Below are positions 1 through 64,000 of a stretch of 64,000 nt of DNA, one piece after another. The stretch is taken from positions 1 to 64,000 of the IMG/VR virus record IMGVR_UViG_3300008259_005066; one strand, written 5' to 3'. Each line of letters opens with the position of its first letter. The stretch's first letter is position 1. The translations under genes were made by a program, and so were the position numbers. The notes under the pieces were generated by a model, which was given only the letters and a program-made list of their open reading frames with translations, was not told the origin of the DNA and did not search any database.

Positions 1-603
1 TTCTGTGACACGGATATCAGTCCTATGATACTCGTCTGCCTTTCCTGATGGATCCACGTGCCAGGCATAGAACTTAGACCATGGATAATCTTGTTTGAGG
101 CTAAGAAAAGCATTTAAATTGGGCACAGAATCATCATACATGATGATCTTGTCGTAGTGTTCTTTGCCCAAGAGATGTTGTAGTATGATCTTTTTCTTTT
201 CTTCTGTGGCGGCTTTGATGTTCAAGTTACCAGCACGATACACATGCACTTTTGACATGTCAATGCCATACTGGCGGAATGTGTCCAGGAAAACTTCTCG
301 GTCATTGAAGTCCGAGCGGGCAGTAAGCATGATCACTTTGTTGCCCGTGGCGATGTCTTGTTTGAGTTGGCGGATCATGCCGGGTATGGGCCGGGCCTGT
401 GTGTAGAATTCGCGGGCATCACGGAAAGCACCAAAGTCAAACTCTTCACCGGGCTGTAAGTGATAGTGCGTGAAATCGTGACTGTTGAGTTGCTTCACGA
501 TCCGGCCATCTCGCACCACATTGACCTTGGTGTCTGTGTTGACCAGGGTATCGTCGATGTCAAAGATGACTAGTTTGGAATTAGCGAATTCTTGTGCTCT
601 CAT
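1..603 (-). CDS. HAD-superfamily phosphatase (3'-partial, runs off the window; missing from the ORF track)
   Basis: Manual translation from ATG at 603 is open to base 1: MRAQEFANSKLVIFDIDDTLV...MLTARS...IIMYDDS, i.e. HAD motif I (DxDxT), motif II (T) and motif IV (DD). ATGA overlap with the upstream gene. Confidence 0.85.
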   Translation of the reverse strand, partial: MRAQEFANSKLVIFDIDDTLVNTDTKVNVVRDGRIVKQLNSHDFTHYHLQPGEEFDFGAFRDAREFYTQARPIPGMIRQLKQDIATGNKVIMLTARSDFNDREVFLDTFRQYGIDMSKVHVYRAGNLNIKAATEEKKKIILQHLLGKEHYDKIIMYDDSVPNLNAFLSLKQDYPWSKFYAWHVDPSGKADEYHRTDIRVTE

Positions 604-998
604 ATCATCATCTCTGGTAATGTTTCCAAGTTGGCTTTAATCTTGGCAAAGTTCATCATATATCGGTTGACAAAGTTGGCATAGCCGGCAGGATCTCGGG
701 CTTCCCAATCTGCCAATCTTTCTTTCATTGCTGTGTATTCTTCATTAAATGCCACAGCATTGTCGCTTTTACTTTTCCAAAGCCGTTTGACTGTTTCTTC
801 TAGTTCTCGGGTGTTGGGGTTGTTGGGATAGTGTTTTTTACATATCACCCACAACATGGCAGCCGAGTTGATAATCTTGGTGATGTTCCGATCGGATTGA
901 GCCTGTGCCGATCCCAATGCCGCAGAGCCAGCCACGGCACCTGCACCACGCAAGAAGTCTCTGCGAGTGATTTCGACTAATAATTCTTGTGCTCTCAT
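600..998 (-). CDS. Hypothetical protein with twin-arginine (Tat) signal peptide
   Basis: MRAQELLVE-ITRRDFLRGAGAVAGSAALGSAQA matches S/T-R-R-x-F-L, then a hydrophobic stretch and an AxA site. Confidence 0.75.
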   Translation of the reverse strand: MRAQELLVEITRRDFLRGAGAVAGSAALGSAQAQSDRNITKIINSAAMLWVICKKHYPNNPNTRELEETVKRLWKSKSDNAVAFNEEYTAMKERLADWEARDPAGYANFVNRYMMNFAKIKANLETLPEMMI

Positions 999-1579
999 AG
1001 GCTGTAGGGGTCCATTATCACTAGATGTCCATCACTGCGGCGGCGAAGGTTCTCTATCTGGCTGAGATCCAATGGTGCCTGGCCGCCCAAGGCTTGTTCT
1101 AATTTCAGCGTAGTATTTACTAAACCCACGATGTCATCACGATCCAGTTCTTTAGGAGCAGGATTGTTCTTCATGAACTCCTGCACACGATCACGTCCGC
1201 GTGCCACTGCTGACATGAGATTTTCTAGATAGTCCAGCGTGGCTTCTTCGTTGGCCACATAGTCTAGATATTCCATCTCATACACAAAATATGTTTCTCC
1301 ATCTACTTCAAAATCACCCACGTTGTAAATCCTGGGAATATAAGGATCGTTCTGATTGTTGACGAAAAATTTCACGTAGTTTTTTACTATCTGTTCGCGC
1401 TCATCTTCACCTATGCCCAAGACTTTGAGTATGGTGTTTCTGGGACTCAACAAGGCTATCTGATCGCGTCCTTCGCCGGCCAACTGATAGCCGCGATCAA
1501 AAAAATAGTTTTGTATGCGGTCGCTCACTGATAACTCATCGGGAAAGTTTACTTCTGAGATAAATTCCTGAGATCGCAT
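995..1579 (-). CDS. Protein-kinase-like (PKL/APH fold) protein
   Basis: Gly loop GEGRDQIA, ILKV lysine, YEMEYL hinge, DLSQIEN catalytic-loop-like and VIMDP metal-binding-like motifs. The D-to-N spacing is one residue longer than canonical. Confidence 0.6.
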   Translation of the reverse strand: MRSQEFISEVNFPDELSVSDRIQNYFFDRGYQLAGEGRDQIALLSPRNTILKVLGIGEDEREQIVKNYVKFFVNNQNDPYIPRIYNVGDFEVDGETYFVYEMEYLDYVANEEATLDYLENLMSAVARGRDRVQEFMKNNPAPKELDRDDIVGLVNTTLKLEQALGGQAPLDLSQIENLRRRSDGHLVIMDPYSL

Positions 1580-4500
1580 TATCTCAACTCTGGAACGACT
1601 TCTACAGGATCATCAAATCTAGTGCGTTGGACCCATTGTTGTGCCACACGATTGGCATCGCCTTGACTGTTGCCTATGCCACTGAATGTGTAAACCACTT
1701 CTCCGGTATTGGCATTACGAACTTGCCACTGTCCTGAGAATTCGCCCTGTGTTGATGTGGCAACAGGTTCTCGATTGCGCCGCCAGGCTGGTGGCTGTTG
1801 GGGGTGTGCAGATATCTGTATGACATCTCGACCTTGCATTTGCAACGCATCTAGCACATTCTGTCTGGCTGCTTCGGCACTGGCAGCATCAATGTTCAAA
1901 GAATCACTGGTTACTGTTCCATTCCTGCGCTCATCCCACATCACACGATAGTGTCCGGCGTCTGATACTGCGCCTGCGGGTTGAGGCTCACCTATGCGGG
2001 CCTGTATCTGTTCACGATCTCGCTCATTGTCTGCGGCCACTGCCGGTGTGACCTTGGGTTCTTTGAGGCGTTTGGCCACTTGAGCACGTGGACTCAGTTT
2101 CTTTTCTGGCTCAGGAGTGTCATCGGGCCTGCGATATATCTCCCAATCGTCGGAGAGTCGATCCCCATACTCTGCCTGGACCTTTTGTTTGGCGCTGTCA
2201 AAATCTCTGGCTCTCACAGTGAGTATGATGTCACCGTAGGAATCCTTGACATCATACCAGGGTTGTTTCTTACGGATGTCCAAATTGCGCCATTCGGGTG
2301 TGTTGCCATACTTGTCCTGGGCTTTCATATAGGCAGTGTCATATTCATCAGCATAGAAAGAGTCGATCACTCCATCCGGACCAGACTTGCGCTGATCATA
2401 CACTTCCCACTCTTCTTGACCAGTGGTGGGTATCTCTTTCTGGAGCACAGCATTGGCCCACTGTTTCTTGAGTTCTTCTGGAGTTATGGTGCCAGCGGCA
2501 AATTGAGAAAATAACTTGAGACCGTCATCCTGTGCACCAGGTGAGATCAGTTTATAGAGTTTCTTGGCATACTCTCGACGTTCCAGGCTGGGGCTGCCTG
2601 CGATCTGCATGGCCCGAGCAAAACGCAACATGGTATTGCGGATGTCATCATATTCACCGCGACTCTCCATGCTCAAATAATCACCACCAGGGCTACGGAA
2701 CTCGATGTAGCCGTCCTGGATGTGTGCGGAAGTATACTTGCTGTCTCCCACACCGTTCTGCACATAACGAGCAGCCAGTTCAATGAGATTTTTCTGCACC
2801 AGTTCTAGCGCACCCATGGGATCAAATCGGGCTTCAGTCAAGGTGCCACGGCGGCGTGCCACTCGCATGCTGTTGCGTAGTTTTTCCATGGCCGATGCCG
2901 CATAGGTGTTGGAAGCACGACCAAACTTGTCTAACACATATTCGTCGCCCATGAACAGCACCAATTTGACATAGTCTACGTCACCGCCCACATAGGGTAT
3001 AGAGATGCCCATGTGCAAGCCGGTGGACGAGTTGGTGTAGGCATCGGCTTCTGAGTTACCCCACTCAATGACCTGTTTTAATTTTTCCAGGGTTTCTGGC
3101 AAGGGCAAGGGCGGAGACACGATCTCCAGGCCCATTTCATCATCACGATCATCGGGATCTAGGCTGCCGTCGGGTTCGATGATCCATAGACCGGGCCGGC
3201 GTGTGGTTGAGTGATAGCCTGAACTCACTCTCACTGGCATGTCAATGGCACGCTGTAAACTGTCACCAATATCGCTCCACTCACGGCTGCCAGTGCCAGA
3301 GGAACCGCCGCTCCAGTAGGGCCAGTCAAGGCTTTCTTCGTTGGCGATGTCAGTCATGTAACCATAGCGGTCACGGAGGAAGTCGCGCTCGTCAAACTCG
3401 CCGCCTTCTCGCGTCATGTCCCAATAATATTCGCGAGCCGCATCGTAATATTCGCCTTGGCTTTCAAACTCATTGGTTATTTCTTCTTCGAATGCTTCGT
3501 AGGCCGCATCGGATGCTTGCTTGAATTTTTGGTATAATTCGTTGGATTGTGCATATTCATCTTGATCTGAACTCCGGGTGAATCTTGGTGCGCTGTCGCC
3601 GGCTTTCATTATAGCGGGCACTGCCTCGTCACCAAACATTTCCTCGACCTTGTCTTGGATACGGCTTTCGCGTTCTGAGTCATCGTCCCAGACGTTGGTC
3701 TCCATGTAGTCACGCACTTGATCTTCGGCATTCTCGTCCCAACTCTCGCTGATCTGTTCATCCACCCATTCCGTATAGGCTTCCCACAGGCTTTCTCGTA
3801 GATTCCTGGCGCCTTGGCGACTCAAACCATAGCCATAGTCATCATTGGAGAAGAAGTCTATGACATGGTCGATGTCATCGGGCCGCTCATCGTAGTCGTA
3901 GTCAGGTTCTTGATCGTAGTCTTCATCTTCGTCACGGCGGGTATCACGGAAGATCATTTCTGCTTCAAAGCCAGCACGTATACCTTCGGCTTCAGGTGAT
4001 CGTGCCCAGGCTTCCAAGGCCCCGGGCGACATCTTGACTTCCATGAGATCTTCGTCTTCTTTGACTTCGATATTGACGAATCTTGGATTGCCAGTGCTCG
4101 ATGGTGTTTTTTTCTTTGGTCGGTCTTGTGGTCTTTGTCGTTTCTGGGCCTGCCCTTGATATGGATCTATTTTTTGTCGTGGGTCTGGCACGGCAGGAGT
4201 CACGGGATTGACTGCTTCAAACACTCCAGTCTCTTTGTATTCCTTCAAGGCATTGGCCAAGTTCTTGATCAACAGTGCAGGACGTCCTTGGCTGTCGGTC
4301 TGCAATCCCAACTTGTTGGCTTCCTTGCCTACCTGTCCAGGTCGGATGTCCACTGTGAGTGCTGTTTTGAAACGTGGATCTCGGGCCTGCTTCTTGGTGG
4401 GGATGTATCCTGCGGCATCTTCGGCCACTTTACCTTGTATTTTCTGTTGTAGACGATAGGTCTTGATGAATTCTTGTTCCGAGCGTGTCAAAGGACGACC

Positions 4501-6678
4501 TGTCGTGGCCTTGCCCATGACAAACTTGTAGTAATCTTCGCGATCCTTTTGGCTGCGACTCACAGGCGTCTGTATGGATTCTCTGCGCGGTGCAGGACCT
4601 TCTATGGCCACCATGGCACGGAATGTGTTGCCCATCTGGTCGGCTTCATAATCCACAACTTTCCAACCGCCGGGGCCCAGTGTGATAGGACCATGCTGTT
4701 GTTGTGCGCGGTTGATGGCATTTTCCAGGGCCTGTCGATAGGCTTCTTCTGCTGATGCAGCCGCGGCGTTTGACGCAACACGCTCACCTTGCGGTCTAGG
4801 GCCACCATAGATCAACTTGCCACCCACACGTATTTCTCTGCTGCCACGTGCCATGTCTCGGGCTATGCCCTTGAGTTCTTCTTCAGCACCTGCACGGGTG
4901 AATATGCCCGAGGGTTGATATATCTGCTTGCCTATCTGATAGGCCGTGCGCCCCACATCCTGTGCCTGTGCTGGCTGTCCCAGTGCGGCAGCGGCTGCCA
5001 AGGCACCAGTGGCCAGTGTTTTTCCTAGACCCTCGTCTACATTGTAGGTAGGATCGGTCTTGACTTTTCGCATGCCAGCGGGTTGCCGGGGATCCTTGGG
5101 ATCGATGTCAGTGACATCTAGGCCCGTGGCTTCAAGATCTTTGATAAACTTATGTTCAGTTTCTTCATCGCCAAACGAGATTATGGAACTGGGCGGACCT
5201 GCACCAAAGTCATGCTTGCCCAAGCCTTTCATGTTGGAGATATGCTGTCCCAGTTTATACCAGTCATACACATCGCTCACATCTACCCTCACAGTGCCTG
5301 CGGGCATGGTAGGAGGGAATTCTGGTCCTGGTGGAGTCTGATCACCATAGTGTGCTTCGATGTCATCGTCTTCACCGGTAGCACCAGACTGTGCGGGTGA
5401 AAACTCCGTGAGTTGTTCTTCCACTGTTTCTGCGCCAAAGAATTCTGGATAACGATTTTGGAAATGGCGCATAATTATGCCGGCCTTGGCATTGGCTTCA
5501 TTTTCGTAGGGACTGCCAGTGCGACCCGCTGTGTCAGGCATGTCTCGGCCCAAGCGTTCATGCTGTTTGTAATGTGTGAGTTCATGTGCCACGGTGCGCA
5601 GGATGTCCATGATGTGGCGACCGTGCGTGGCCACCTCGATCATTTTCTTGTCATCTACATAATGGCCCATTGAATGGATGTGCTTGGTAAATTTTTCACC
5701 TTGCAAGATGATGCGAGGCAGTTGATCTAGTTTGAGATAGTGCGCGGCAAAATGCACGAAGCGTCGCACCACTTTGTCTATGGGTATGCTCTTGGCTTGG
5801 ACTTTGATCTCTGTGTCTTCGCGCACACTTTCTCCGCCCCCATCACCACCACCGTCTGCGGCTTCGGCGTCGCCGGTCTGACCATAATAACCATAGCCTG
5901 GATAATAGTATCCACCAAAAGAACCGTAACGGAATTTCTTTTTGGATTTTTTCTTTTTCTTTCGGCGCTCAGCCAGGCTCAGTTTTGAATCTTCTAGGCT
6001 GGCACGATGATCAAACAATCGCTTGACCAAGCCCTGTGTGCGCAGGATCTTGTAGGCCAGATTCTCAGGTCCGAACTCGCCATGTTCATCCAATCCGGCC
6101 TGCCGATATCGTTTTATCACGTCAGTGAGATTGGTGACTGTTTGGAGATCATCGCTGGTCAGTGCAAGCTCAATCAGGTCTCTGAGTTTTTCGTATTTTG
6201 CTTGGGTTGATTTTTCGTCGAGATTGCCTTGGCGTCGCACGGGAATACGAGTCCAGTCGTCACGCACGATGGAATACTCACCAAGGCTGCGAACAGGCTT
6301 GCCTGCGTCTTGCACATAGAGCTCGACGTCATAGCCTCTGATTTTTATATCGTGTTGATCGTTGTATTGATATTTCTTTGCGTTGAACAGCTCTTGATAT
6401 ACTTGGTCGGGATTGAGCTTGCTGAAATCTACTAAGAGATGCAGATCTATGTCGGAATGGGGAGTATAGGTGTATGCGGCATTGGATCCACTCACAGTGA
6501 TATCTTCCACTGCGAGATCACTGATGCCCAGGAATTCGCGGAAATCATCGGCGATTTTGATCAGGGCCTCACGCACTTCGGGACGCATGCGATCGCCGTC
6601 CCAGAGTGCAGGGTTTAATTCAGTGTGAAACTTTACCGCGTCCGACAGGCGGTAACTGTCTAATTCATTGATGTCCAT
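1579..6678 (-). CDS. 1699-aa multidomain protein: nucleotidyltransferase + zincin (HExxH) + putative amidoligase + C-terminal repeats
   Basis: GS-x10-DIDLH (pol-beta NTase) in residues 60-125; AHELTH at 364-369; GFEAE...W-x-I-x-PDGSL...EIVSPPL...NSSTGLHM...IEFR (COOH-NH2 ligase family). Confidence 0.8.
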   Translation of the reverse strand: MDINELDSYRLSDAVKFHTELNPALWDGDRMRPEVREALIKIADDFREFLGISDLAVEDITVSGSNAAYTYTPHSDIDLHLLVDFSKLNPDQVYQELFNAKKYQYNDQHDIKIRGYDVELYVQDAGKPVRSLGEYSIVRDDWTRIPVRRQGNLDEKSTQAKYEKLRDLIELALTSDDLQTVTNLTDVIKRYRQAGLDEHGEFGPENLAYKILRTQGLVKRLFDHRASLEDSKLSLAERRKKKKKSKKKFRYGSFGGYYYPGYGYYGQTGDAEAADGGGDGGGESVREDTEIKVQAKSIPIDKVVRRFVHFAAHYLKLDQLPRIILQGEKFTKHIHSMGHYVDDKKMIEVATHGRHIMDILRTVAHELTHYKQHERLGRDMPDTAGRTGSPYENEANAKAGIIMRHFQNRYPEFFGAETVEEQLTEFSPAQSGATGEDDDIEAHYGDQTPPGPEFPPTMPAGTVRVDVSDVYDWYKLGQHISNMKGLGKHDFGAGPPSSIISFGDEETEHKFIKDLEATGLDVTDIDPKDPRQPAGMRKVKTDPTYNVDEGLGKTLATGALAAAAALGQPAQAQDVGRTAYQIGKQIYQPSGIFTRAGAEEELKGIARDMARGSREIRVGGKLIYGGPRPQGERVASNAAAASAEEAYRQALENAINRAQQQHGPITLGPGGWKVVDYEADQMGNTFRAMVAIEGPAPRRESIQTPVSRSQKDREDYYKFVMGKATTGRPLTRSEQEFIKTYRLQQKIQGKVAEDAAGYIPTKKQARDPRFKTALTVDIRPGQVGKEANKLGLQTDSQGRPALLIKNLANALKEYKETGVFEAVNPVTPAVPDPRQKIDPYQGQAQKRQRPQDRPKKKTPSSTGNPRFVNIEVKEDEDLMEVKMSPGALEAWARSPEAEGIRAGFEAEMIFRDTRRDEDEDYDQEPDYDYDERPDDIDHVIDFFSNDDYGYGLSRQGARNLRESLWEAYTEWVDEQISESWDENAEDQVRDYMETNVWDDDSERESRIQDKVEEMFGDEAVPAIMKAGDSAPRFTRSSDQDEYAQSNELYQKFKQASDAAYEAFEEEITNEFESQGEYYDAAREYYWDMTREGGEFDERDFLRDRYGYMTDIANEESLDWPYWSGGSSGTGSREWSDIGDSLQRAIDMPVRVSSGYHSTTRRPGLWIIEPDGSLDPDDRDDEMGLEIVSPPLPLPETLEKLKQVIEWGNSEADAYTNSSTGLHMGISIPYVGGDVDYVKLVLFMGDEYVLDKFGRASNTYAASAMEKLRNSMRVARRRGTLTEARFDPMGALELVQKNLIELAARYVQNGVGDSKYTSAHIQDGYIEFRSPGGDYLSMESRGEYDDIRNTMLRFARAMQIAGSPSLERREYAKKLYKLISPGAQDDGLKLFSQFAAGTITPEELKKQWANAVLQKEIPTTGQEEWEVYDQRKSGPDGVIDSFYADEYDTAYMKAQDKYGNTPEWRNLDIRKKQPWYDVKDSYGDIILTVRARDFDSAKQKVQAEYGDRLSDDWEIYRRPDDTPEPEKKLSPRAQVAKRLKEPKVTPAVAADNERDREQIQARIGEPQPAGAVSDAGHYRVMWDERRNGTVTSDSLNIDAASAEAARQNVLDALQMQGRDVIQISAHPQQPPAWRRNREPVATSTQGEFSGQWQVRNANTGEVVYTFSGIGNSQGDANRVAQQWVQRTRFDDPVEVVPELR

Positions 6679-6686
6679 GGCACATC

Positions 6687-6696
6687 TATTTATTTA
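6687..6696 (-). promoter_or_regulatory. Tandem TAAATA late-promoter motif
   Basis: TAAATAAATA overlaps the upstream stop, 8 nt before the 1699-aa gene. Confidence 0.55.
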
Positions 6697-9211: not shown

Positions 9212-9219
9212 TATTTATA
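9212..9219 (-). promoter_or_regulatory. T4-type late promoter
   Basis: TATAAATA, 5 nt upstream of the ATG at 9206. Confidence 0.65.
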
Positions 9220-10199: not shown

Positions 10200-10895
10200 T
10201 TATTTATCGCGTATGAGTTTGACTGTTTTCCTTGTGATACGAGGTAACAACAGGCTCAGCATAGTAACTATGCCCATGCCATCATGATCAATGAAAAAGT
10301 TTTCACTGACATAATAGTGTTTTTGATCCTGTTCAATAAACTGCGCCAGACCCGGTCCCAATCGTATGCTTTCTTGCTTGATCAAGAAGTCCACTAGATT
10401 GTGGCGTTGAGGTTCATCCAGACGCTGTGCCCGGAAATAGGACCGGAACTCGTGCTGGCTGTTCTGGATCCTCAGCGTGTCTCTGGGGCGATCCAACACA
10501 CTGCGTTTCACGCTCACTGCATGCACATAAGGCAACTGTTCTATGGTGCGGATCAGGCCCAGATCGCTGGTGTAAACATATCCCCAATCACCTGACACTG
10601 TGATTTTGTAATTCTGTTGTGCCTGCAGGAAATCCAACATGGCATGGCAATTGGCTCGCTGTTCTTCGGTGATCTGACCCCGGCGGCTGGCCCAAGATCC
10701 ACCAAAGTTCGGACTGCGTTGCCGCCAGTCATTGCGATGGTTGATCATGCGATCGATGCGGTCATGCTCCATCTCTCGCACACAACTCATCTCGTCCATG
10801 CGGAAAGCCAAACAATACTCATAGAGATCGAAATAAGATCTATCTCTACGATGTATTTTAATGGTCAAAGGGCTAGTCGACTTGTATGATACCAT
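10200..10895 (-). CDS. Hypothetical protein
   Basis: Start moved to MVSYKS to limit overlap with clpA; start is uncertain. Confidence 0.6.
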   Translation of the reverse strand: MVSYKSTSPLTIKIHRRDRSYFDLYEYCLAFRMDEMSCVREMEHDRIDRMINHRNDWRQRSPNFGGSWASRRGQITEEQRANCHAMLDFLQAQQNYKITVSGDWGYVYTSDLGLIRTIEQLPYVHAVSVKRSVLDRPRDTLRIQNSQHEFRSYFRAQRLDEPQRHNLVDFLIKQESIRLGPGLAQFIEQDQKHYYVSENFFIDHDGMGIVTMLSLLLPRITRKTVKLIRDK

Positions 10896-13082
10896 CGGCG
10901 TCCACGGTTCCTGTGCTGGGTATTGGGTTGAGATCGCTGAAAGCCACTGTGCCATCGCGATAGTCTGCTGTGATTTCGCAGTCCTGCAAGCGATCAAACA
11001 GGATCTTGCGGCTCAATGGCACGCGGATCAGTTCGTCGATTTTGCGACCCAACGGCCTCGCACCCATCTTGGGATCATAGCCAACGTCTGCTAGATGCTC
11101 CACCATGGCTTCTGTCAGCGTGAGTCTGATGTTGCGATCCACTAGACTGCGTTTGAGTTCGTCTACGAACTTGATGACCACTTTCTTGATACTCAGCGGA
11201 TCCAGTTTGTTGAATTTGCAGATGAGATCCAAGCGATTGCGCAGTTCCGGGCGGAAGTAATCTTTCACAGCGCGATCTTCTTCGCCGGTCTTCTCGAGGC
11301 TCTGGCCAAACCCGATTGTGTTATTTTCATTGTCTCGAGCACCTAGATTTGACGTCATGATGATGATGCAGTTCTTGACGTCCACGGTCTTGCCATTGCT
11401 TCCAGTGATGGTGCCTTCGTCCATCATCTGCAGGAAGATGTTGGCTATGTCTGGGTGGGCTTTTTCCACTTCATCGAACAACAGCACTGAGAATGGATGT
11501 TTAGAAAGATCATTGATCAGTTTGCCCCCGGCCAGTTGGCTGTCATCATAGCCCACATAGCCCGGAGGTGCTCCCAGCAGTGAACTCACGGTGTGTCGAT
11601 CTTGATATTCGCTCATGTCGTATCTCAACAGTTTCATGTCGAGATTGTCGGCCAACAGCCGTGCCAGTTCTGTTTTACCTGTGCCAGTGGGGCCCAGGAA
11701 AAGGAAACTGCCCACTGGCCTGCGACCTGATGCGATACCAGCGAAGTTCACATAGATACGTTCCAACACTTGATCCACCACATGATCCTGACCGTAAAGT
11801 TTTTGCTTGATGTTGCTGTCTAGTTCGGTCACTCGGGTGTTTACATCATTCTTCACACGTTCGGGTGGAATATTGGCCACACGGCCCACTTGATCCTGGA
11901 TCAAATCTGCGGTGATCACCACATCATCAAGATCTTTGATGCGTTCTCGGGCACAGGCCGCATCTACTAGATCTATGCTCTTGTCAGGATTTTTGCGATC
12001 AGTGATATAACGACTGGCCAGTTCCACTGCTTTGGTGATGGCATCTGCGTTGATTTTGACCCGATGGAATTCTTCCATGCGAGGTTGCAATCCTGTCAGT
12101 ATGCGTATAATGCGCGATCTTTTTCAAACGACTCATAGTATTCTTCCCAAGTGGTTGATGCTATGACTTTGAGCAAGCCCTTGGTTATGGCCGGCTTGAT
12201 CATGTTGGCAAAGTCTAGACTGGATCCAGACCCTGCACCAGCACCGCGCATGGTGTGCGCTTCATCTATGAACAGTATGACATTTTTCTTATGTTCCAAG
12301 GCCATGAGCACGGCCTTGAGTTTTTCTTCGAACTCGCCGCGATATTTGCTTCCTGCCAGCAATGAGCCAATCTCCAGGCTCCAGACTTCATGATCCTTTA
12401 GGAATTCTGGCACTGTGCCGTTGTATATCAGCGTGGCCAGGCCCTCGGCGATGGCAGTCTTGCCCACTCCGGGATCTCCTACCATGAGCACGTTTGACTT
12501 AAACTTTTTGGCCAATACCGTGATGATTTCATTGAGTTCTGTGGATCGCCCGATCAAGGGCTCCAGTTTATCCTCTCTCGCCCGCTGGCTGAAATTGATA
12601 CAGTGTTCGGTGAGGATTTCGTTGGCCTGATCATCACTGATCACTCCGTCCTTGGTAGTGTAGTTGGCTTGCCAAAATTCGATGAACTCTTTCTTTTCCA
12701 GCCCGTGCTTGAGGAAATAATAGTGTGCATGGCTGTTTGACTCGTTCATGATGGCCAACCATAGATCTATAGTGGTCACTTGCCTGCGGCCTGTGAACAA
12801 CACCTGGGTGAGCGCACGATTGAACACACGTTCCAATCCATTGGTTTTCTTGGGATCTTCGTCGCGATTCATACGCAGGCTGACCATGCTGTCGATATAA
12901 CTTTCAAGGTCTTGATCGAGATGATCCACAGGCGTGCCAAACTTGACGATGACCTGCGTGAAAGGCTGATGCCTTACCAAGGCCAAGGCCAGGTGTTCCA
13001 GCGTGACATATTCGTGTCGCTTTACGCGGGCCAGTTTTTGCGCCTGGGCTAATATTTGTTCAATTTCAGGATTCTGTTGCAT
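10873..13082 (-). pseudogene. clpA: ClpA-like AAA+ chaperone split by a frameshifting deletion near 12105
   Basis: Clp N-domain, D1 Walker A GDPGVGKT and Walker B LFIDEAH, D2 GPTGTGKT, LLFDEVEKAH and GARPL. KDRAL joins IRILTGL in another frame; the RRF-containing segment is absent. Confidence 0.9.
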
Positions 13083-13512
13083 TCTGTTCCTTGGCTCGAT
13101 CATGCATGGTTATTCCTTGTAGATGATCCAACTCGTGTTGGAAACATCTGGCTTCAAGTCCCGAAAGATCTGCTTCGACCCAATCACCGAAATGATTTTG
13201 GTATCTCGCCCTGATCGCATCGGGTCTTTTAAGTATACATGAGTCTCCGGGAAAACTCAAGCATCCTTCCTCAAATTCGGCAAACACATCACTGCTAGAC
13301 ACTATGACAGGATTAAAGCACGCCCGATCGTGTCCGTCAACGCTCATCACAAACAATCGTTTGGAAAGGCCAATCTGTGGAGCTGCCAATCCTATGCCAT
13401 TTTGCAAGCGCATCAACCCAAACATCTGGGTGGCCAGATCATGATTGCGGACAGGATACTGGAAATCTACAGGCTTGGCTTGATTGTGTAAAACCCTGCG
13501 TGTCAACTTCAT
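13066..13512 (-). CDS. def: Peptide deformylase
   Basis: GIGLAAPQIG, EGCLS and QHELDHL motifs; ATG follows TAAATA. Confidence 0.95.
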   Translation of the reverse strand: MKLTRRVLHNQAKPVDFQYPVRNHDLATQMFGLMRLQNGIGLAAPQIGLSKRLFVMSVDGHDRACFNPVIVSSSDVFAEFEEGCLSFPGDSCILKRPDAIRARYQNHFGDWVEADLSGLEARCFQHELDHLQGITMHDRAKEQNATES

Positions 13513-13516
13513 AAAA

Positions 13517-14215
13517 TTATTTATTGGTGTGTTTTTCCAGTATAGCGATGATTTCTTCGGGTATGTTACCGGGCATTTCGGCACGCAATCTCACTATCAA
13601 ATCGCCGGTGGTGTGTCCTTCTCGCACGACTCCGCGTCCTCGCGCTCGTAACATAGTTCCGGGACGTGTGCGTGGTGGTATGGCCAAACTCAACACACGA
13701 CCTTGTAGATCTGTGATCTCTAGATTATGACCCAGGATCAATTGCCAGAAATCCACACCTCGTTCGGTATAAAGATCTTGTCCATCTCGCTGCCAGCCGG
13801 GGTGCCCATGCACACGATAGTTGACAATGAGATCTTGACCACCCGGGCCCAAGCCCGGATAACGCACATTTTCATTGTCATTGATCCCCGGTGGTATGGT
13901 TATTTCCAAGGCCTGTGTGCCTGTTTGGGTGTGCATGCTCACAGTGCGAGGTCCACCAACCACAGCAGTCTCCAATGAAATCCAGATACTGATGCGCTGA
14001 TTGCGCGGTGCTTGTTGGCCACGTGGATTCATCCTTGCACCGAACATCTCAAATATGGTATCAAAGTTGAAAGGTCCACCACCGCCGCCGTGGAAAGGAT
14101 TGCCGTTGACGTTGATACGCACCTGAGGATTGTCATAGTGCTGGCGCTTGGTGGCATCGCCCAAGGTATCATAGGCTTCATTGATTTCTTTGAATTTTTT
14201 CTCATCACCACCGCC
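13517..14215 (-). pseudogene. dnaJ: DnaJ/CbpA-like co-chaperone lacking start codon, helices I-II and the HPD motif
   Basis: GGDEKKFKEINEAYDTLGDATKRQHYD (J-domain helices III-IV), a G/F region and the C-terminal domain are present. An in-frame TAG lies just upstream. Confidence 0.8.
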
Positions 14216-16169: not shown

Positions 16170-17279
16170 TTATTTTGTGGGCTCAAATAGCCAAGTATGG
16201 TCTTGTTTTCTCAAGACGTCTAGTTCTAGGTTCACACGTTGGGCAGTGGTCCATGCATCGGAGTCAAATTCATGCTGGATGATGTTGTTGCGCAGATCTA
16301 CCAGGACATCACGTGCAGAATCTACAAAATCCAGAGCCAACAAACAATCAAGATAGTCAATGGCCGCAGGACGCATATGATCTGGCCAGTTAATGGGAGA
16401 GAAGTATCTAGGATGGTTGCATATCTGTATGAACTGTGTGCGTCCGTTGGGACGATCGTTGAATTTCCGGACGATGTTGATAAATGCCAGCAAGGGTCCA
16501 AGTTGGAAAAAATTTAGTTGCGTTATCACTGTGCTGAAGTTCACACTGTGACCATGGTTGGCTAGATACAGGACGTTGCGCTCGATCTGCGACCAACTGG
16601 TGCCGTGGCGTATGATTTCTGCAGCTGGGCCCACAGCATCAAGACTCACAGTGAAATTAACATTGGGCATGGTGCTGGCGATTTCCAACCACCATGGATC
16701 ACGGAAGCTGCCATTGGTGATCATGATGATCTTGGTATCTAACTGCTCACGTCGTATACGATTGACTATTTCTTTTACTTCGGGCAATAAGGTAGGTTCA
16801 CCGCCGGTGAACATCAGTCTATCAATGGTCGATATGTTGTCCAAGATCCATTGTTTGTCTGACACTGTGGCGGTTTTTTCTGGCGGAATCTGATAGAGAG
16901 TTTGTAAGAATTCGCTCTGGCGCACATCTTGTGCGATACCGTTGGAAAAATAAGGTTCGCATGACCGGCATCGAAAGTTGCAGACGTTGCTGGAACGATA
17001 ATCCACATAATCTATATCAGTGTCTGACACAGGAGTGGAACCATAGTGTTGCAACGCTCCCAGTCTGGTGCCCACACCATGCTGTTGTTCGTTACGGATA
17101 CAGTCAGCACATCCAGAGTCTATGGATCCTGACAGGATGTTTTGTTGCAAATTCCTCAATCGATCACTGGACAACCACTGAGTCACAGTGATCGGAGCAG
17201 TCTCTGTGAAACTGCAACAAGGCTTGATACCTCGTGGCTCAATGAAAACATGTCGGAATGGCAAAGGACAATAACTCAT
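16170..17279 (-). CDS. Radical SAM protein with N-terminal SPASM/twitch-like Cys cluster
   Basis: CNFRCRSC (CxxxCxxC), FTGGEPT; N-terminal CP...PCC...C..C. Confidence 0.9.
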   Translation of the reverse strand: MSYCPLPFRHVFIEPRGIKPCCSFTETAPITVTQWLSSDRLRNLQQNILSGSIDSGCADCIRNEQQHGVGTRLGALQHYGSTPVSDTDIDYVDYRSSNVCNFRCRSCEPYFSNGIAQDVRQSEFLQTLYQIPPEKTATVSDKQWILDNISTIDRLMFTGGEPTLLPEVKEIVNRIRREQLDTKIIMITNGSFRDPWWLEIASTMPNVNFTVSLDAVGPAAEIIRHGTSWSQIERNVLYLANHGHSVNFSTVITQLNFFQLGPLLAFINIVRKFNDRPNGRTQFIQICNHPRYFSPINWPDHMRPAAIDYLDCLLALDFVDSARDVLVDLRNNIIQHEFDSDAWTTAQRVNLELDVLRKQDHTWLFEPTK

Positions 17280-17893
17280 AGTGCAGACACTCTGTGTAAC
17301 CAATGATCAGCGGCTGCCACATGCGCTGCCTCCAGTGGATGCCAACCTGGGCTCTCGGCAAAGCCACGACCTCGGCTCCATTCGAGGAATGTCTGTCCAT
17401 CAAAATCCTGGAGATGTTGGTGTATTTTGCTTTGTAAAACCTGCACATAATCCGGAGCATGCCATTGTTGATCCAACAGCAATCGATCCATGTAAGTCAT
17501 CACACATCGATGACCTTGCATCATGTCGCACGCATGTGATACATAGATCAAATTCCGGAACTTGTCTGACAGTTCACCGTGGAAATGTCTATAGTAAAGA
17601 TCGTCATTTGGTGAATCATCCAATGCGGGCCGTATGGTATGCCACTGGGCGTCTTGGCTGTGGACATAATCAAAACGATCAATCCAGGTCCAGTTGACGA
17701 GATAGGTGGCCCGGGGCCCAAAACGATCCAGCGCCTCAATCACTTGTTGTAGTATGCGGAGATTGCCCACGCCAGGTTGGGCTAGACAATGATACTCTGA
17801 GTCCAGTCTCTGCGCGACCAGCGCGGGCCATGTGCTGTTTGCATCTTGTAGATCGCTACCGTAGAAAAAACTGTCGCCACAACTCACTATCAT
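17276..17893 (-). CDS. SGNH/GDSL-like hydrolase
   Basis: CGDSF block I, PGVGN and a C-terminal HP; paralog of 34680..35375. Confidence 0.65.
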   Translation of the reverse strand: MIVSCGDSFFYGSDLQDANSTWPALVAQRLDSEYHCLAQPGVGNLRILQQVIEALDRFGPRATYLVNWTWIDRFDYVHSQDAQWHTIRPALDDSPNDDLYYRHFHGELSDKFRNLIYVSHACDMMQGHRCVMTYMDRLLLDQQWHAPDYVQVLQSKIHQHLQDFDGQTFLEWSRGRGFAESPGWHPLEAAHVAAADHWLHRVSAL

Positions 17894-19017: not shown

Positions 19018-19186
19018 GGTCAAGTATTTATGGTCAGCGATAGTTTGCTGTTTTTTGCCTGGCAGGCATGGGCAAAGCCTAATATTTAGTGGGCTGATCT
19101 TGGAATTCTGTCCTGTGTTATGACTCAAGTTAATGACCTAAATATTCATGTGAGGTAGCGCACAAATGTTCAAAGGAGAATTGACA

Positions 19187-29176: not shown

Positions 29177-29218
29177 GTTTTACCTCGCTTTGAGATATTT
29201 ATGCTATTTTGGAGGCGT

Positions 29219-37503: not shown

Positions 37504-37532
37504 ATTATAATACCTTTTGGATTATTGGTCAA
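37504..37532 (-). promoter_or_regulatory. Sigma70-type promoter
   Basis: TTGACC-17-TATAAT. Confidence 0.75.
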
Positions 37533-38928
37533 CCTGCTGAAAAATAGGCTCTAACCAAGGAAAAACTCGTTGCCAATTGGTTGCTCTACGCCGATCGAGT
37601 TCGGTTAAAAATTCTCGGAGCTTTATGATTTCCTCTGTGTCAAATCCTTTGCTGGCGCTTTCTTGAGCAATGCCTTGCAGATATTTTTTGATATTGATCT
37701 GCTCCGCATCATTCTCGGGCATGATCTGGATAGCTCTATTAAAATCATCCACGAAAACATCGCCTAAAATATCAACATGCATGTGCAACGGTGATTCTGC
37801 ACTGTTCATGTAATGAGATACATGGCGTATCTTTCTCCATTGATTGATGCGCTCAATAAGATCAGGCAGAGTCTTGATAGTGAGAGGAGTCAGTGTGCTA
37901 CCTACTATTAATCTAATCCAAGATTGATCAAGCAGGTATCGGAAATTTTTTTCCCAAATGTCTAGTTTGAGAGGAAAACGTGCATATTCTTGTTCAGGTC
38001 CCCAGCAATCGAGACTGGCAGTTACCACAAAAGTTTTGAGATGTTGTTTGTCAATGAGATTTTTAATTTTGCTTACCACCGCAGACACTCGAGCCGGAGT
38101 AGCATTGAGATTGGTAAAAATCTGGAACTCTAGTTCCGGCATTGGGTTGTGATCAAAAAAATCCAGACAATCATCGAGATCTTTTTGGAACAAAGGCTCG
38201 CCGCCAAGGAAATTAAAGTTGGTAAGGCTATGTCCGTGTTGCGATATCCACTCAAACATCTTGGTTTTATTTTTTGCGATATCAGGACTTTTCTTAAATG
38301 TATTCGAGATGATCAAACCATTTTTTTCAAACTTACCATGTTTTTTGTTTTCAGCATCCCATAAACTGCTGAAATGCGGACCGCAATACACACATTTCAA
38401 ATTACAGACATTGTCAAAGTAAACTTCTAATATACGAGGAGTGACTTGGATAGCAACAAGATCATCATCCAGTTCTGGCGGAGCAAACATTCCAGGCATA
38501 TCAAGATTGGTTATCCTGTCACTTTGTCCTCCGGCCGTTTCTATATCTCGACAATAACCACAACCTTTTTCGGGCCAAAATCCCTGGAGCATGCGAGATC
38601 TATCGTCCAACTTGCTAGGAGTGTTGTGAAAATCAAATACATCGATATCAAACTTGTGATGATTGGTGCGATGACAACTGGCAGTATTTTCTGTCGTAAG
38701 ATAAACTGTGCTCCAGTTCCATTTGAGTTGACAAGCTGTGGCAGTTTTTATGGGAAATGTTTTGTGTTGATATCGAGGCTGATTTCTGTAACTACCTATC
38801 ACATAACCATGAACTTGTTGACACTCATCCTGTATCCACTGTGGTAGAGATAAAAAATCTTGTTCATGGTCGCAGTCCGGCCATGATGAATCTTTTATGC
38901 TTAGATAAAATTCCTGCCAAGGCGTCAT
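37522..38928 (-). CDS. Radical SAM protein
   Basis: CNLKCVYC and FLGGEP; AT-rich. Confidence 0.9.
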   Translation of the reverse strand: MTPWQEFYLSIKDSSWPDCDHEQDFLSLPQWIQDECQQVHGYVIGSYRNQPRYQHKTFPIKTATACQLKWNWSTVYLTTENTASCHRTNHHKFDIDVFDFHNTPSKLDDRSRMLQGFWPEKGCGYCRDIETAGGQSDRITNLDMPGMFAPPELDDDLVAIQVTPRILEVYFDNVCNLKCVYCGPHFSSLWDAENKKHGKFEKNGLIISNTFKKSPDIAKNKTKMFEWISQHGHSLTNFNFLGGEPLFQKDLDDCLDFFDHNPMPELEFQIFTNLNATPARVSAVVSKIKNLIDKQHLKTFVVTASLDCWGPEQEYARFPLKLDIWEKNFRYLLDQSWIRLIVGSTLTPLTIKTLPDLIERINQWRKIRHVSHYMNSAESPLHMHVDILGDVFVDDFNRAIQIMPENDAEQINIKKYLQGIAQESASKGFDTEEIIKLREFLTELDRRRATNWQRVFPWLEPIFQQVDQ

Positions 38929-39692
38929 TCTTGATCTTTGAATTTACACACCGGAATAGCCTGCATCTTGTGTAGATTGCGAGCACGGATCTCTCGATAT
39001 CGTTTTAGATTTTTCTTGAGCTCTTTGTTATCGCACTGTATTTCGCCCTGGTCCATGCGCATGGCCACTTCAAGGTCGGCGTAGGTCATGCCTAACTGTT
39101 GTTCGTCAGTGCGACCATCTGCCCATAAACCATCAGTGGGAGCGGCATCAATGATATCTTGCAACACGCCCAGTTCACGACCCATGGCCCACACTTCAGT
39201 TTTCATGCAGTCTCCAATGGGACTGATATCCACACCACCGTCGCCATACTTGGTAAAGAACCCCACTCCAAAGTCTTCAACCTTGTTGCCTGTGCCCACA
39301 ACGATGCCGGAGTTGGCTTGCGCTAATTGATACAAGGTCATCATGCGTAATCTAGCACGACTGTTGGCATAGGCCAGTTCATCGCTGAACACACGGGTAG
39401 CATGTTCAAATTGTTCAAAGGCGGATGTGAGATCGATAACAAAGTGATCCACCAGTTCAAACGTGTCTTTCAGCCACTGTCCATGCCGCATGCTGAGATC
39501 ATGTGTGTGTTCGCTTTGCCGGATGGGCATGCTCACAGCAATGACATACAGTCCTGCACGAGCACACAGCGTGGATACCACGGCCGAATCTATGCCGCCC
39601 GATACACCCACCACCAAGGTATTGATTTTGTGTCTGGTGGCATAACTTTTAATCCACTTTGTAATGTAGTTGATACGTTGTTTTGGTGTCAT
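38925..39692 (-). CDS. nadE: NH3-dependent NAD+ synthetase
   Basis: SGGIDS, NSRARLRM, GTGNKVE, GFFTKYGDG and APTDGLW. Confidence 0.95.
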   Translation of the reverse strand: MTPKQRINYITKWIKSYATRHKINTLVVGVSGGIDSAVVSTLCARAGLYVIAVSMPIRQSEHTHDLSMRHGQWLKDTFELVDHFVIDLTSAFEQFEHATRVFSDELAYANSRARLRMMTLYQLAQANSGIVVGTGNKVEDFGVGFFTKYGDGGVDISPIGDCMKTEVWAMGRELGVLQDIIDAAPTDGLWADGRTDEQQLGMTYADLEVAMRMDQGEIQCDNKELKKNLKRYREIRARNLHKMQAIPVCKFKDQE

Positions 39693-55141: not shown

Positions 55142-55170
55142 AGTATAGCAAAGATATTTATTATTGTCAA
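55142..55170 (-). promoter_or_regulatory. Sigma70-type promoter
   Basis: TTGACA-17-TATACT with TGn. Confidence 0.7.
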
Positions 55171-61724: not shown

Positions 61725-62191
61725 TAATCGTAGATCCAACCCAGATCCTCGATCCGGTGTATCCAAGTAAACACTGGGATGTCGAAATCCAGTGTCCAGA
61801 TTCCATTCCATCCCAGGTAAGTGTGAGCAGATAGATATTCTGGTAGATCCTGTCCAGACTTCCGTTGTTCAGTGGCCCAGGGTTCTGGGTATCGAGGACG
61901 ATAACGTCCTTGCCATAGTAATTTGTCAGTGCTGATATCGTTTAATCTCACACCCTTTATTACCACGGCTTTGTCTTTGTTCCCCACTGTGTCTGAATCT
62001 TGTTTGTTGAGCAATTCAACTGAAACTTTGGCATCACCTTTGCCGGATTCCCATGTATGGGAAAAATGGGTGGCTTTTTCGAGAGGGCCGGCCCAGCGCC
62101 ATTCTGGGCCTATCTTCACGATTATCTCAGGCAGTTCCTCATGCCACACAGAATCGATTTCGATATCGATCTTAGTTCTGTAGGTAGCCAT
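61724..62191 (-). CDS. Hypothetical protein accompanying a radical SAM gene
   Basis: Start MATYRT overlaps the radical SAM end. Confidence 0.65.
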   Translation of the reverse strand: MATYRTKIDIEIDSVWHEELPEIIVKIGPEWRWAGPLEKATHFSHTWESGKGDAKVSVELLNKQDSDTVGNKDKAVVIKGVRLNDISTDKLLWQGRYRPRYPEPWATEQRKSGQDLPEYLSAHTYLGWNGIWTLDFDIPVFTWIHRIEDLGWIYD

Positions 62192-63494: not shown

Positions 63495-64000
63495 CTCGTT
63501 GGGTGATGATGCGATCAGCTAGGCCATACTCCACGGCCTGTTGTGCTGTCATCCAGTTGTCTCGATCCATATCTTTCTCCAGAGTCGCATAGTCTTTGCC
63601 GGTGTGCTGGACATAGAGTTCAGTCAAGGTCTTCTTCCAGCGCATGAGTTCTTTGTAACGGATCTCCACTTCAGTGACCTGTCCTTCAGCTCCACCCAGA
63701 GGTTGATGGATCATGTGCTGGCTGTGTGGCAGGATGAACCGCTTGCCAGCAGTGCCGGCGCAGGCCAGCATGGAGCCCATCGACGCGGCCAATCCACACA
63801 CTATGGTAGAAACATCACACTTGATGAACTGCATGGTATCATAGATGCTCATGCCCGCTGTGATTGACCCGCCTGGTGAGTTGATATAGAACAAGATGTC
63901 TCTGTCAGGATTTTCCGCTTCTAGGAACAGCATCTGCGCCACTATGAGGCTGGCTGAATGTGAGTTTACGTCTGTATCCAGCATGATGATGCGATCTCTC
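63487..64000 (-). CDS. clpP: ATP-dependent Clp protease proteolytic subunit (5'-partial)
   Basis: YINSPGG, AASMG (Ser), MIHQP (His) and DRD (Asp). Confidence 0.95.
   Translation of the reverse strand, partial: RDRIIMLDTDVNSHSASLIVAQMLFLEAENPDRDILFYINSPGGSITAGMSIYDTMQFIKCDVSTIVCGLAASMGSMLACAGTAGKRFILPHSQHMIHQPLGGAEGQVTEVEIRYKELMRWKKTLTELYVQHTGKDYATLEKDMDRDNWMTAQQAVEYGLADRIITQRDV

What the first reader, a model, noticed from the sequence alone, without database searches (positions are those of the whole stretch)
1..1579. Three adjacent unrelated genes share a T4-like capsid-targeting leader (MR-A/S-QE-F/L...E)
Seen: three consecutive unrelated proteins begin MRSQEFISE (kinase-like), MRAQELLVE (Tat protein) and MRAQEF (HAD phosphatase); the 1699-aa neighbour starts MDINE. 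Established: T4 internal proteins carry an N-terminal capsid-targeting sequence (MKTYQEFIAE) that the gp21 prohead protease removes after Glu at I/L-x-E. Inference: this is an operon of enzymes packaged in the head, matured by the prohead protease and injected with the DNA. The HAD protein lacks the distal I/L-x-E, so it is the weakest member.
Basis: partly seen in the sequence, partly recalled or inferred. Interest (0 to 1): 0.85.

Follow-up and report, generated by a model that had tools for sequence, protein, structure and literature searches.

The report
Shared capsid-targeting-like leader on phage proteins
Three neighbouring, unrelated genes of an uncultured freshwater giant phage start with the same nine-residue tag (MRAQEF-I/L/V-x-E), which I found on more than 60 other protein families of related phages and almost never in bacteria. 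It most likely works like phage T4's address label for loading proteins into the virus head, but packaging was not shown.

Summary
On the minus strand, three translationally coupled genes start MRSQEFISE (protein-kinase-like fold), MRAQELLVE (Tat-signal protein) and MRAQEFANS (HAD phosphatase, 614 aa in full). The motif occurs nowhere else in six frames of the window.

The genome is a ~270 kb uncultured freshwater phage. Its nearest cultured relative is Pseudomonas phage PA5oct.

The tag is widespread. Nearly all matches are ORF starts, on about 65 protein families. Synonymous codons vary, and conservation stops after Glu9.

In 596 Gb of bacterial genomes there were four matches, about the chance number, and two of them are chance.

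The tag resembles T4's MKTYQEFIAE and the capsid-protein cleavage site (T4 FLTE, PA5oct FLVE). Fusion proteins keep I/L/V-x-E at the domain junction.

The best reading is a T4-type capsid-targeting propeptide, cut by a gp21-family prohead protease, that loads host-takeover enzymes for injection.

Not shown: packaging, cleavage, and the head protease gene of this genome, which I could not reach. I rate it a new variant of a known kind. No paper in the searched library holds the string MRAQEF.

The parts
1553..1579 (-). Leader codons 1-9 of the kinase-like gene (MRSQEFISE)
   Evidence: AF2 gives pLDDT below 50 for residues 1-13, so this is a flexible extension outside the fold.
995..1579 (-). 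194-aa protein with a protein-kinase-like fold. The conserved core starts right after Glu9 (VNFPDEL).
   Evidence: phrog_15752, E 1e-4. AF2 plus Foldseek give 111 PDB hits with E below 0.001; the 50 listed are all kinases, pseudokinases or aminoglycoside phosphotransferases. Family alignment A3.
972..998 (-). Leader codons 1-9 of the Tat-signal gene (MRAQELLVE)
   Evidence: Conserved as MRAQE[FL][LI]xE in all five homologues.
600..998 (-). 132-aa protein: leader, then a twin-arginine signal (ITRRDFLRGAGA...AQA), then a domain of about 98 aa with no known family
   Evidence: Pfam PF10518, 28.8 bits against a cutoff of 22.7. Residues 9-21 are invariant even in a homologue of 39% identity.
586..603 (-). 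Leader codons 1-6 of the HAD gene (MRAQEF). The distal I/L-x-E is absent (ANS).
1..603 (-). N-terminal 201 aa of a 614-aa multidomain protein: HAD phosphatase (DIDDT at residues 15-19), a weak GNAT-like match and a C-terminal basic Cys module. The gene continues past the window start.
   Evidence: Pfam and PHROG hits. Full length from L002. Module sharing.
1579..6678 (-). 1699-aa multidomain (polyvalent-type) protein, first gene of the coupled block. It has a nucleotidyltransferase-like N-terminus, an HExxH motif and an amidoligase domain. Residues 871-1699 match a stand-alone leader-bearing protein of another phage.
   Evidence: Pfam PF12224 and PF01909. Alignment with L010, 563 aa, starting MRAQEF.
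6687..6694 (-). AATAAATA, a T4-late-promoter-like motif 9 nt before the ATG of the 1699-aa gene
   Evidence: NATAAATA occurs seven times on the coding strand, always close upstream of a start codon (6-20 nt to the called start for five; the other two, by eye only, precede ATGs of small ORFs that were outside my gene list), and once on the other strand.

Best explanation
The shared N-terminus is most likely a capsid-targeting propeptide of the T4 type. The first six residues (MRAQEF) would bind the protein to the scaffolding core while the prohead assembles. The next three (I/L/V-x-E) would form the site cut after Glu9 by a gp21-family prohead protease. The trimmed cargo would stay in the head and enter the next host with the DNA. 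The cargo includes a kinase-like enzyme, a HAD phosphatase with further modules, small basic proteins, and in relatives GNAT, ART, NUDIX and nucleotidyltransferase domains. Variants that lack I/L-x-E, such as the HAD protein, would be packaged uncut. Multidomain versions would be cut again at I/L/V-x-E junctions. Shown here: the motif, its restriction to N-termini and to phages, peptide-level conservation, the sharp end at Glu9, and the resemblances. Inferred: binding to the core, cleavage, packaging and injection.
For: (1) Spread. Of 134 matches, only two are complete ORFs under 60 aa; three more are cut by a locus end. They give 124 distinct proteins in about 65 families.
(2) Without the distal constraint, 73 of 76 unique MRAQEF matches start ORFs of at least 50 aa. 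Of those, 62% have [ILVMF]-x-E at positions 7-9 and 15% have it shifted by a few residues.
(3) All synonymous codons are used (Arg AGA 86, CGA 28; Ala GCA 66, GCC 20, GCT 14, GCG 11). Positions 10 and beyond are unconserved.
(4) Phage restriction. There were 4 matches in 596 Gb of bacterial and archaeal genomes, about the number I expect by chance. Two are chance and two lie on freshwater MAG contigs.
(5) T4 reference, read from NC_000866: IPII and IPIII start MKTYQEFIAE, gp24 MAKINELLRE, gp21 MNEPQLLIE, gp22 MLKEQLIAE. The loose pattern hits only gp21, gp22, gp24, IPII, IPIII and gp2 in 50 kb of T4. The T4 CTS alone suffices for packaging.
(6) The nearest cultured relative, PA5oct, has the T4 gene order portal, small core protein, protease, scaffold, capsid protein. 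Its virion-detected gp150 starts MKINDIITE. Homologues start MKA[RK][DE]LLVE. Relatives of the protease carry PF03420.
(7) The leader's F-[ILV]-x-E matches the capsid-protein maturation site. A 66-aa leader protein aligns FIKE-NASVGATSSGSVATV with PA5oct capsid protein FLVE-NASAGATQAGNIATI. T4 gp23 has FLTE-AEIGG at its cleavage site (sequence; that this is the cleavage site rests on the 65-residue propeptide stated in PMC9026906).
(8) In the kinase-like family, long forms carry the leader on an extra N-terminal domain and still keep [ILV]-x-E immediately before the kinase core, in 22 of 22 sequences. The 1699-aa protein has LME where a stand-alone homologue has LDE just after its leader.
(9) Cargo domains are those of injected effectors: GNAT, ART-PolyVal, NUDIX, nucleotidyltransferase, amidoligase, ParB_N and an RNA polymerase inhibitor (PMC5512222).
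(10) A late-promoter-like NATAAATA lies before the operon. Eight of 118 leader genes have ATAAATA 4-6 nt before the ATG.
(11) The leader is disordered in the AF2 model.
Against: There is no virion proteome, no observed N-terminus and no transcript timing for this phage; no RNA run holds it. I could not retrieve the head module (protease, capsid protein) of this genome or of any contig that carries MRAQEF genes, so their co-occurrence is inferred from relatives. The cluster lies between replication genes rather than in a structural module. The PA5oct proteins in the syntenic slot are not homologous to it; only the flanking w86/gp310 and w123/gp299 match. PA5oct itself uses the leader sparingly. 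gp150 has it, but gp271 (MKIKEIILE) was not detected in virions. About 23% of MRAQEF proteins lack any nearby I/L-x-E. A conserved Tat export signal directly behind the leader of gene 2 suggests a different destination for that protein. The [ILV]-x-E before the kinase core could be part of the domain rather than a cleavage site.
Confidence: 0.6

Rival explanations
1. The tag is a protein-level signal for another fate. It could be recognised by the phage's own Clp machinery for timed unfolding or degradation, or it could belong to export signals, as in the Tat protein.
For: The genome encodes a ClpA/B-like AAA+ protein inside the window. Just upstream of the window it encodes two ClpP paralogues, ClpX and ClpS. 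PA5oct gp271, which starts MKIKEIILE and was not detected in virions, lies next to ClpP. Gene 2 has an invariant Tat signal immediately after the leader.
Against: The tag ends in the specific I/L/V-x-E motif of gp21-type proteases and matches the capsid-protein cleavage site. The same kind of leader sits on the virion-detected core protein gp150 and its homologues inside head modules. Only one of about 65 cargo families has a Tat signal. I know of no Clp degron that resembles it (own knowledge).
Confidence: 0.12
2. The conserved element acts mainly at the nucleic-acid level. It would be a shared 5' coding segment that helps translational coupling or initiation, or that serves as a homology patch for shuffling gene cassettes. 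The peptide would be incidental.
For: Genes 2 and 3 share 17 identical nucleotides from the ATG. All three starts overlap the previous stop codon, and Shine-Dalgarno sequences are weak. Tagged genes often sit in tandem (L010, L044, L113). The cargo proteins are mosaics of shuffled modules.
Against: Across contigs every synonymous codon is used while the amino acids stay fixed. Gene 1 of the window encodes the same peptide with different codons. Conservation ends at a particular residue, Glu9. I/L/V-x-E persists at internal domain junctions where no start codon exists. A recombination role can coexist with the targeting role.
Confidence: 0.1
3. Chance, or common descent of the three genes (paralogues that kept only their N-termini).
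For: None beyond adjacency.
Against: There are three hits in six frames, all at gene starts. The folds differ. The same tag occurs on about 65 families in more than 100 contigs.
Confidence: 0.01

Closest known systems
[quoted passage not shown]
   Same: Both are short tags at the extreme N-terminus shared by unrelated proteins of one phage. They share the core QEF-I-x-E (T4 MKTYQEFIAE; here MR[A/S]QEF[ILV]xE). Both end in I/L-x-Glu, the gp21 cleavage motif. The cargo includes small basic proteins and host-modifying enzymes.
   Different: The tag here is one residue shorter and has no equivalent of T4 Tyr4. It occurs in a PA5oct-related giant freshwater phage lineage rather than in Tevenvirinae. 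The cargo repertoire is far larger (about 65 families, many of them enzymes and multidomain proteins). Some members lack the cleavage part. One member carries a Tat signal. Function is untested here.
Polyvalent proteins of phages and conjugative elements (Iyer et al. 2017, PMC5512222)
   Same: Multidomain proteins that combine disparate enzymes (ART-PolyVal, GNAT, NUDIX, ParB, nucleotidyltransferase, amidoligase, an HExxH motif) and are predicted to be delivered with the DNA.
   Different: Those proteins were linked to packaging through MuF or portal fusions and gene context, not through a common N-terminal tag. Here the same modules also occur as separate genes, each with its own leader.
Propeptide-processed head and ejection proteins of phiKZ-like giant phages (phiKZ, SPN3US)
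   Same: Many internal head proteins are matured by a prohead protease that cuts after Glu (papers listed).
   Different: Those phages use a different motif (A/S/G-x-E) and long, non-uniform propeptides (own knowledge; papers listed but not read here). They have no short universal tag.
Twin-arginine (Tat) signal peptides
   Same: Gene 2 has TRRDFLR, a Gly/Ala-rich hydrophobic stretch and AQA, with a Pfam match above the cutoff.
   Different: It is preceded by the phage leader. I know of no other phage protein described with both (own knowledge, not searched).

Membership tests
T4-type capsid targeting sequence | A short (about 10 aa) segment at the extreme N-terminus shared by otherwise unrelated proteins of the same phage | tested here: met
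   Three genes in the window and about nine of the 13 genes that follow the 1699-aa gene carry it. Folds differ.
T4-type capsid targeting sequence | Ends in the gp21 cleavage motif I/L-x-Glu | tested here: met
   Met for the kinase-like protein (ISE) and the Tat protein (LVE), not for the HAD protein (ANS). In an unbiased sample, 62% have the motif at positions 7-9.
T4-type capsid targeting sequence | Sequence resemblance to the experimentally defined T4 CTS, including the targeting residue Phe7 and the processing residues Ile8 and Glu10 | tested here: met
   T4 IPII and IPIII were read from NC_000866. Residue roles come from PMC9026906. QEF-I-x-E is shared; Tyr4 has no counterpart.
T4-type capsid targeting sequence | The same genome encodes a gp21-family (PF03420) prohead protease and a T4-type scaffolding core | tested here: inconclusive
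   Present in PA5oct and its IMG/VR relatives. Not retrieved for this genome or for any MRAQEF-bearing contig.
T4-type capsid targeting sequence | Late expression together with head genes | tested here: inconclusive
   NATAAATA lies 9 nt before the first gene of the coupled block and 4-6 nt before eight other leader genes. No RNA data exist.
T4-type capsid targeting sequence | Tagged proteins are present in the virion with the tag removed | not testable with these tools
   The phage is uncultured. PA5oct gp150 is detected in virions, but its N-terminus is not reported and the supplement is not held.
T4-type capsid targeting sequence | The tag alone carries a foreign protein into the head | not testable with these tools
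   Needs an experiment.
Polyvalent proteins | Two or more unrelated effector domains in one polypeptide of a phage or mobile element | tested here: met
   The 1699-aa protein has nucleotidyltransferase-like, HExxH and amidoligase parts. The 614-aa protein has HAD, a below-cutoff GNAT-like match and a basic module.
Tat signal peptide | S/T-R-R-x-F-L-K motif, a hydrophobic region and an A-x-A site, with a Pfam PF10518 score above the gathering cutoff | tested here: met
   28.8 bits against a cutoff of 22.7. TRRDFLRGAGA is invariant in five homologues. Export itself is untested.
Protein-kinase-like fold | Bilobal kinase fold with a Lys in beta-3 and a catalytic D-x-x-x-x-N plus a metal-binding Asp | tested here: met
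   AF2 pLDDT 82.6 and pTM 0.78. Foldseek hits are only kinases or aminoglycoside phosphotransferases, with probability 1.0 but TM only 0.35-0.44. K52, D171...N177 and D190 are invariant in A3. Assigning these to catalytic roles is my reading.

The most novel reading that the evidence does not exclude
The tag may define a portable "injectome" for a large group of uncultured T4-related phages. More than 60 unrelated protein families would be addressed to the head by one nine-residue label. Some would be multi-enzyme polyproteins cut apart at I/L/V-x-E junctions by the prohead protease inside the capsid. At least one cargo would carry a second address, a Tat signal exposed after cleavage, that sends it to the periplasm of the next host after injection.
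Probability: 0.3. Interest if true: 0.8.

Novelty: new variant of a known kind. Interest (0 to 1): 0.62.

Why it matters
If the tag works as in T4, a nine-residue string would identify from sequence alone which proteins an uncultured phage carries in its head and injects. That class usually needs virion proteomics to find, and it includes anti-defence and host-takeover factors. The catalogue found here has about 65 families, mostly without known function, and gives concrete candidates to test. It would also show that the T4 targeting and processing logic extends well beyond T-even phages into giant freshwater phages, and that it handles polyproteins. The tag could serve as a second, orthogonal packaging label for engineered phage capsids.

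Tried and rejected
Tried without success:
- Nucleotide search of the region and protein searches of the kinase-like protein and of the commonest leader family against GenBank phages gave no match.
- The string MRAQEF gave no hit in the paper library.
- I searched for the head module of this clade with blastp and HMMs of PA5oct head proteins against all fetched loci.
- I ran a combined pattern for a leader plus the TRRPRLT motif of the small core protein (no hit).
- I fetched neighbourhoods of a conserved 567-aa structural-region protein and of a putative tail tube. They hold tail and fibre genes (my reading of the ORFs; not scanned against any family library), not head genes.
- I walked about 30 kb upstream of the window. 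It reached ClpP, ClpX, ClpS, ribosomal protein S21 and metabolic genes.
- The protease profile search returned only the 120 hits closest to PA5oct, none on this phage's contigs.
- No RNA run holds the sequence, so I did not lay reads.
- The PA5oct supplement with peptide data is not held.

Rejected:
- That the PA5oct virion proteins in the syntenic slot (gp300-gp309) are homologues of the cluster; they are not.
- That MDINE on the 1699-aa protein is a leader.
- Chance and paralogy.
Full report
**What is in the window**

Nearly all genes lie on the minus strand. Three consecutive genes start at 1579 (194 aa, MRSQEFISE), 998 (132 aa, MRAQELLVE) and 603 (MRAQEFANS, running off the window start). 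MR[AS]QE[FL] occurs exactly three times in the six-frame translation of the 64 kb window, each time at one of these starts.

The starts overlap the preceding stop codons (TAATG, ATGA, ATGA). Together with the 1699-aa gene upstream (1579-6678), the genes therefore form one translationally coupled block. The similarity begins at the ATG, and the upstream 20 nt are unrelated. Genes 2 and 3 share 17 identical nucleotides. Gene 1 spells the same peptide with other codons.

**What the three proteins are**

- The 194-aa protein folds with confidence (pLDDT 82.6, pTM 0.78). Its 111 PDB matches with E below 0.001 include, in the 50 listed, only protein kinases, pseudokinases and aminoglycoside phosphotransferases, though TM-scores are low at 0.35-0.44. 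Residues 1-13 are disordered in the model.
- The 132-aa protein has a Tat signal above Pfam's cutoff.
- The third protein is 614 aa in full. It has a HAD phosphatase domain, a weak below-cutoff GNAT match and a 57-aa basic Cys module.

**Which genome this is**

The exact proteins lie on freshwater metagenome contigs of 267.8 and 274.5 kb. The best cultured relative is Pseudomonas giant phage PA5oct; the clamp loader is 55.6% identical and gene order around it is collinear. GenBank phages hold nothing similar to the cluster itself.

**The cluster is larger than reported**

Downstream of the window the block continues. The starts, with protein lengths, are:
- MRVAEFIAE (105 aa)
- MRAQEFQEV (195 aa)
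- MRAREFVTE (60 aa)
- MRYREILE (177 aa)
- MRVTDIVRE (115 aa)
- MKASEFVSE (176 aa)

The block ends before a homologue of PA5oct virion protein gp310 and the DNA polymerase. About nine of the 13 genes that follow the 1699-aa gene carry the tag. None of the roughly 90 other genes in the window do.

**The tag is widespread and specific**

Of 134 matches, only two are complete ORFs under 60 aa; three more are cut by a locus end.
- The matches give 124 distinct proteins in about 65 families at 60% coverage. Many are mosaics of shared modules.
- Most loci share other genes with the window genome, so this is one broad uncultured group.
- With the distal part left free, 73 of 76 unique MRAQEF matches start ORFs of at least 50 aa. 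Of these, 62% have [ILVMF]-x-E at positions 7-9, 15% have it shifted and 23% lack it.
- Every synonymous codon is used at each position. Residue 10 onward is unconserved.
- In 596 Gb of bacterial and archaeal genomes the pattern occurs four times. My estimate for chance is about four. Two are chance ORFs, and two lie on freshwater MAG contigs, at least one of them a member of a leader family already seen in IMG/VR.

**Link to T4 head assembly**

From the T4 reference record, IPII and IPIII start MKTYQEFIAE, gp24 MAKINELLRE, gp21 MNEPQLLIE and gp22 MLKEQLIAE. A loose pattern derived from these hits only gp21, gp22, gp24, IPII, IPIII and gp2 in 50 kb of T4. The same pattern hits only the kinase-like and Tat genes in the window.

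In T4 the ten residues alone carry foreign proteins into the head. Residues 4 and 7 serve targeting and residues 8 and 10 serve processing. An E10D change blocks cutting but not packaging. By that logic, MRAQEF without I/L-x-E (the HAD protein and its homologue L424) could be a tag that is packaged but not cut.

PA5oct has the T4 gene order portal, small core protein, protease, scaffold, capsid protein. Its virion-detected gp150 starts MKINDIITE. In related IMG/VR head modules the gp150 homologue starts MKA[RK][DE]LLVE, close to the window's MRAQELLVE. The proteases of these relatives carry PF03420.

**The cleavage half of the tag**

A 66-aa leader protein aligns FIKE-NASVGATSSGSVATV with PA5oct capsid protein FLVE-NASAGATQAGNIATI. 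T4 gp23 reads FLTE-AEIGG at its maturation site after Glu65 (sequence; 65-residue propeptide). The last four leader residues therefore copy the capsid protein's own cut site.

In the kinase-like family (208 homologues, all from metagenomes), short forms read MRAQEF[ILV]xE followed at once by the conserved core. Long forms carry a GNAT, ParB-like or other domain in front. In these the leader has moved to the new N-terminus, and [ILV]-x-E is still present directly before the core, in 22 of 22 sequences.

Residues 871-1699 of the 1699-aa protein match a stand-alone MRAQEF protein. The polyprotein has LME where the stand-alone protein has LDE. This fits cutting at junctions. It could also reflect conservation of the domain edge itself.

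**Cargo and timing**

Pfam finds the following among the leader families: GNAT, NUDIX, nucleotidyltransferases, amidoligase, ART-PolyVal, ParB_N, an RNA polymerase inhibitor family, HAD and several DUFs. This is the repertoire predicted for proteins injected with phage DNA (PMC5512222).

NATAAATA, the T4-type late promoter core, occurs seven times on the coding strand of the window. For five the called start lies 6-20 nt downstream. The other two appear, by eye only, to sit just before ATGs of small ORFs that were not in my gene list. One copy is 9 nt before the 1699-aa gene. It occurs once on the other strand. Eight of 118 leader genes elsewhere have ATAAATA 4-6 nt before the ATG. This suggests late transcription but does not prove it.

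**What does not fit or is missing**

- I could not reach the head module of this genome or of any contig with MRAQEF genes.
- The cluster sits among replication genes.
- PA5oct's syntenic slot holds unrelated fibre-like virion proteins.
- PA5oct uses the leader sparingly, and its gp271 (MKIKEIILE) was not detected in virions.
- The Tat signal directly after the leader is invariant even at 39% overall identity. That argues for real export and needs a two-step explanation under the packaging model.
- No RNA run holds the sequence.

**Verdict**

The best explanation is a T4-type capsid-targeting and processing propeptide in a new lineage, with a very large cargo set (confidence about 0.6). The rivals are another protein-level fate such as Clp recognition or export, and a mainly nucleic-acid role in coupling or cassette exchange. 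Each rates about 0.1.

The principle is known from T4. This consensus, its spread and its cargo are not mentioned in any paper of the searched library. I rate it a new variant of a known kind, interest 0.62.

Noticed in passing
window 6687-6694, 9212-9219, 10201-10208, 13518-13525, 19025-19032, 29196-29203, 55155-55162 (minus strand): NATAAATA occurs seven times on the coding strand. Five copies lie 6-20 nt before a called ATG; the other two look, by eye only, to precede ATGs of small ORFs outside my gene list. It occurs once on the other strand. In other contigs ATAAATA lies 4-6 nt before the ATG, which would make late mRNAs almost leaderless.
   Followed up: partly
L243:4559-4741 (just past the window start in the same genome); L048:5983-6180 and about ten other loci: Leader proteins of 60-66 aa whose sequence after Glu9 (NASVGATSSGSVATV...) resembles the N-terminus of the mature capsid protein of PA5oct-type phages. 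An HMM of capsid proteins hits them weakly. They may mimic or partner the capsid protein's N-arm.
   Followed up: partly
window 10873-12090 and 12096-13103 (minus strand): A ClpA/B-like AAA+ gene is split into two ORFs in different frames in the window. It is called as one gene of 753-760 aa on the matching metagenome contigs (L001-L003). This may be a frameshift, an assembly error or a strain difference.
   Followed up: no
L452-L454 (about 30 kb beyond window position 64000 in the same genome): The phage encodes two ClpP paralogues, ClpX, ClpS, HSP20 and ribosomal protein S21, in the same order as PA5oct. It also encodes isocitrate lyase/PEP mutase, AdoMet decarboxylase, a fatty-acid desaturase, UDP-glucose dehydrogenase and UvdE.
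   Followed up: no
window 16170-17303, 37522-38928, 62172-63494: Three separate radical SAM (one with SPASM) proteins lie in one 64 kb stretch, next to an NAD synthetase (38925-39692).
   Followed up: no
L002:12621-12818; L040, L083, L085, L108 and others: Small basic Cys-containing modules recur both as stand-alone leader proteins and as C-terminal modules of larger ones. Examples are KWSxKYKxSINCxxPKGFSQ[KR]AHC, CWxGY...NCVP and NFADG...SCxGSVxxLR. One has homologues in T4-like cyanophages and Pelagibacter phages.
   Followed up: partly
L451:5980-6219 (Haliscomenobacter MAG contig, 70 kb) and L449 (Legionella MAG contig, 2.5 kb): These are the only genuine leader-bearing ORFs found in 185,579 species' genomes. 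Both lie on freshwater MAG contigs. They may be phage contigs binned with a host, which would hint at the host, or mis-binning.
   Followed up: no
window 897-974 (minus strand): The Tat signal of the 132-aa protein (ITRRDFLRGAGA) is invariant in all homologues and more conserved than the mature part.
   Followed up: partly
L326 (PA5oct 179881-180267, gp271): PA5oct gp271 carries MKIKEIILE five codons after its annotated start. It lies next to ClpP and was not detected in virions.
   Followed up: no
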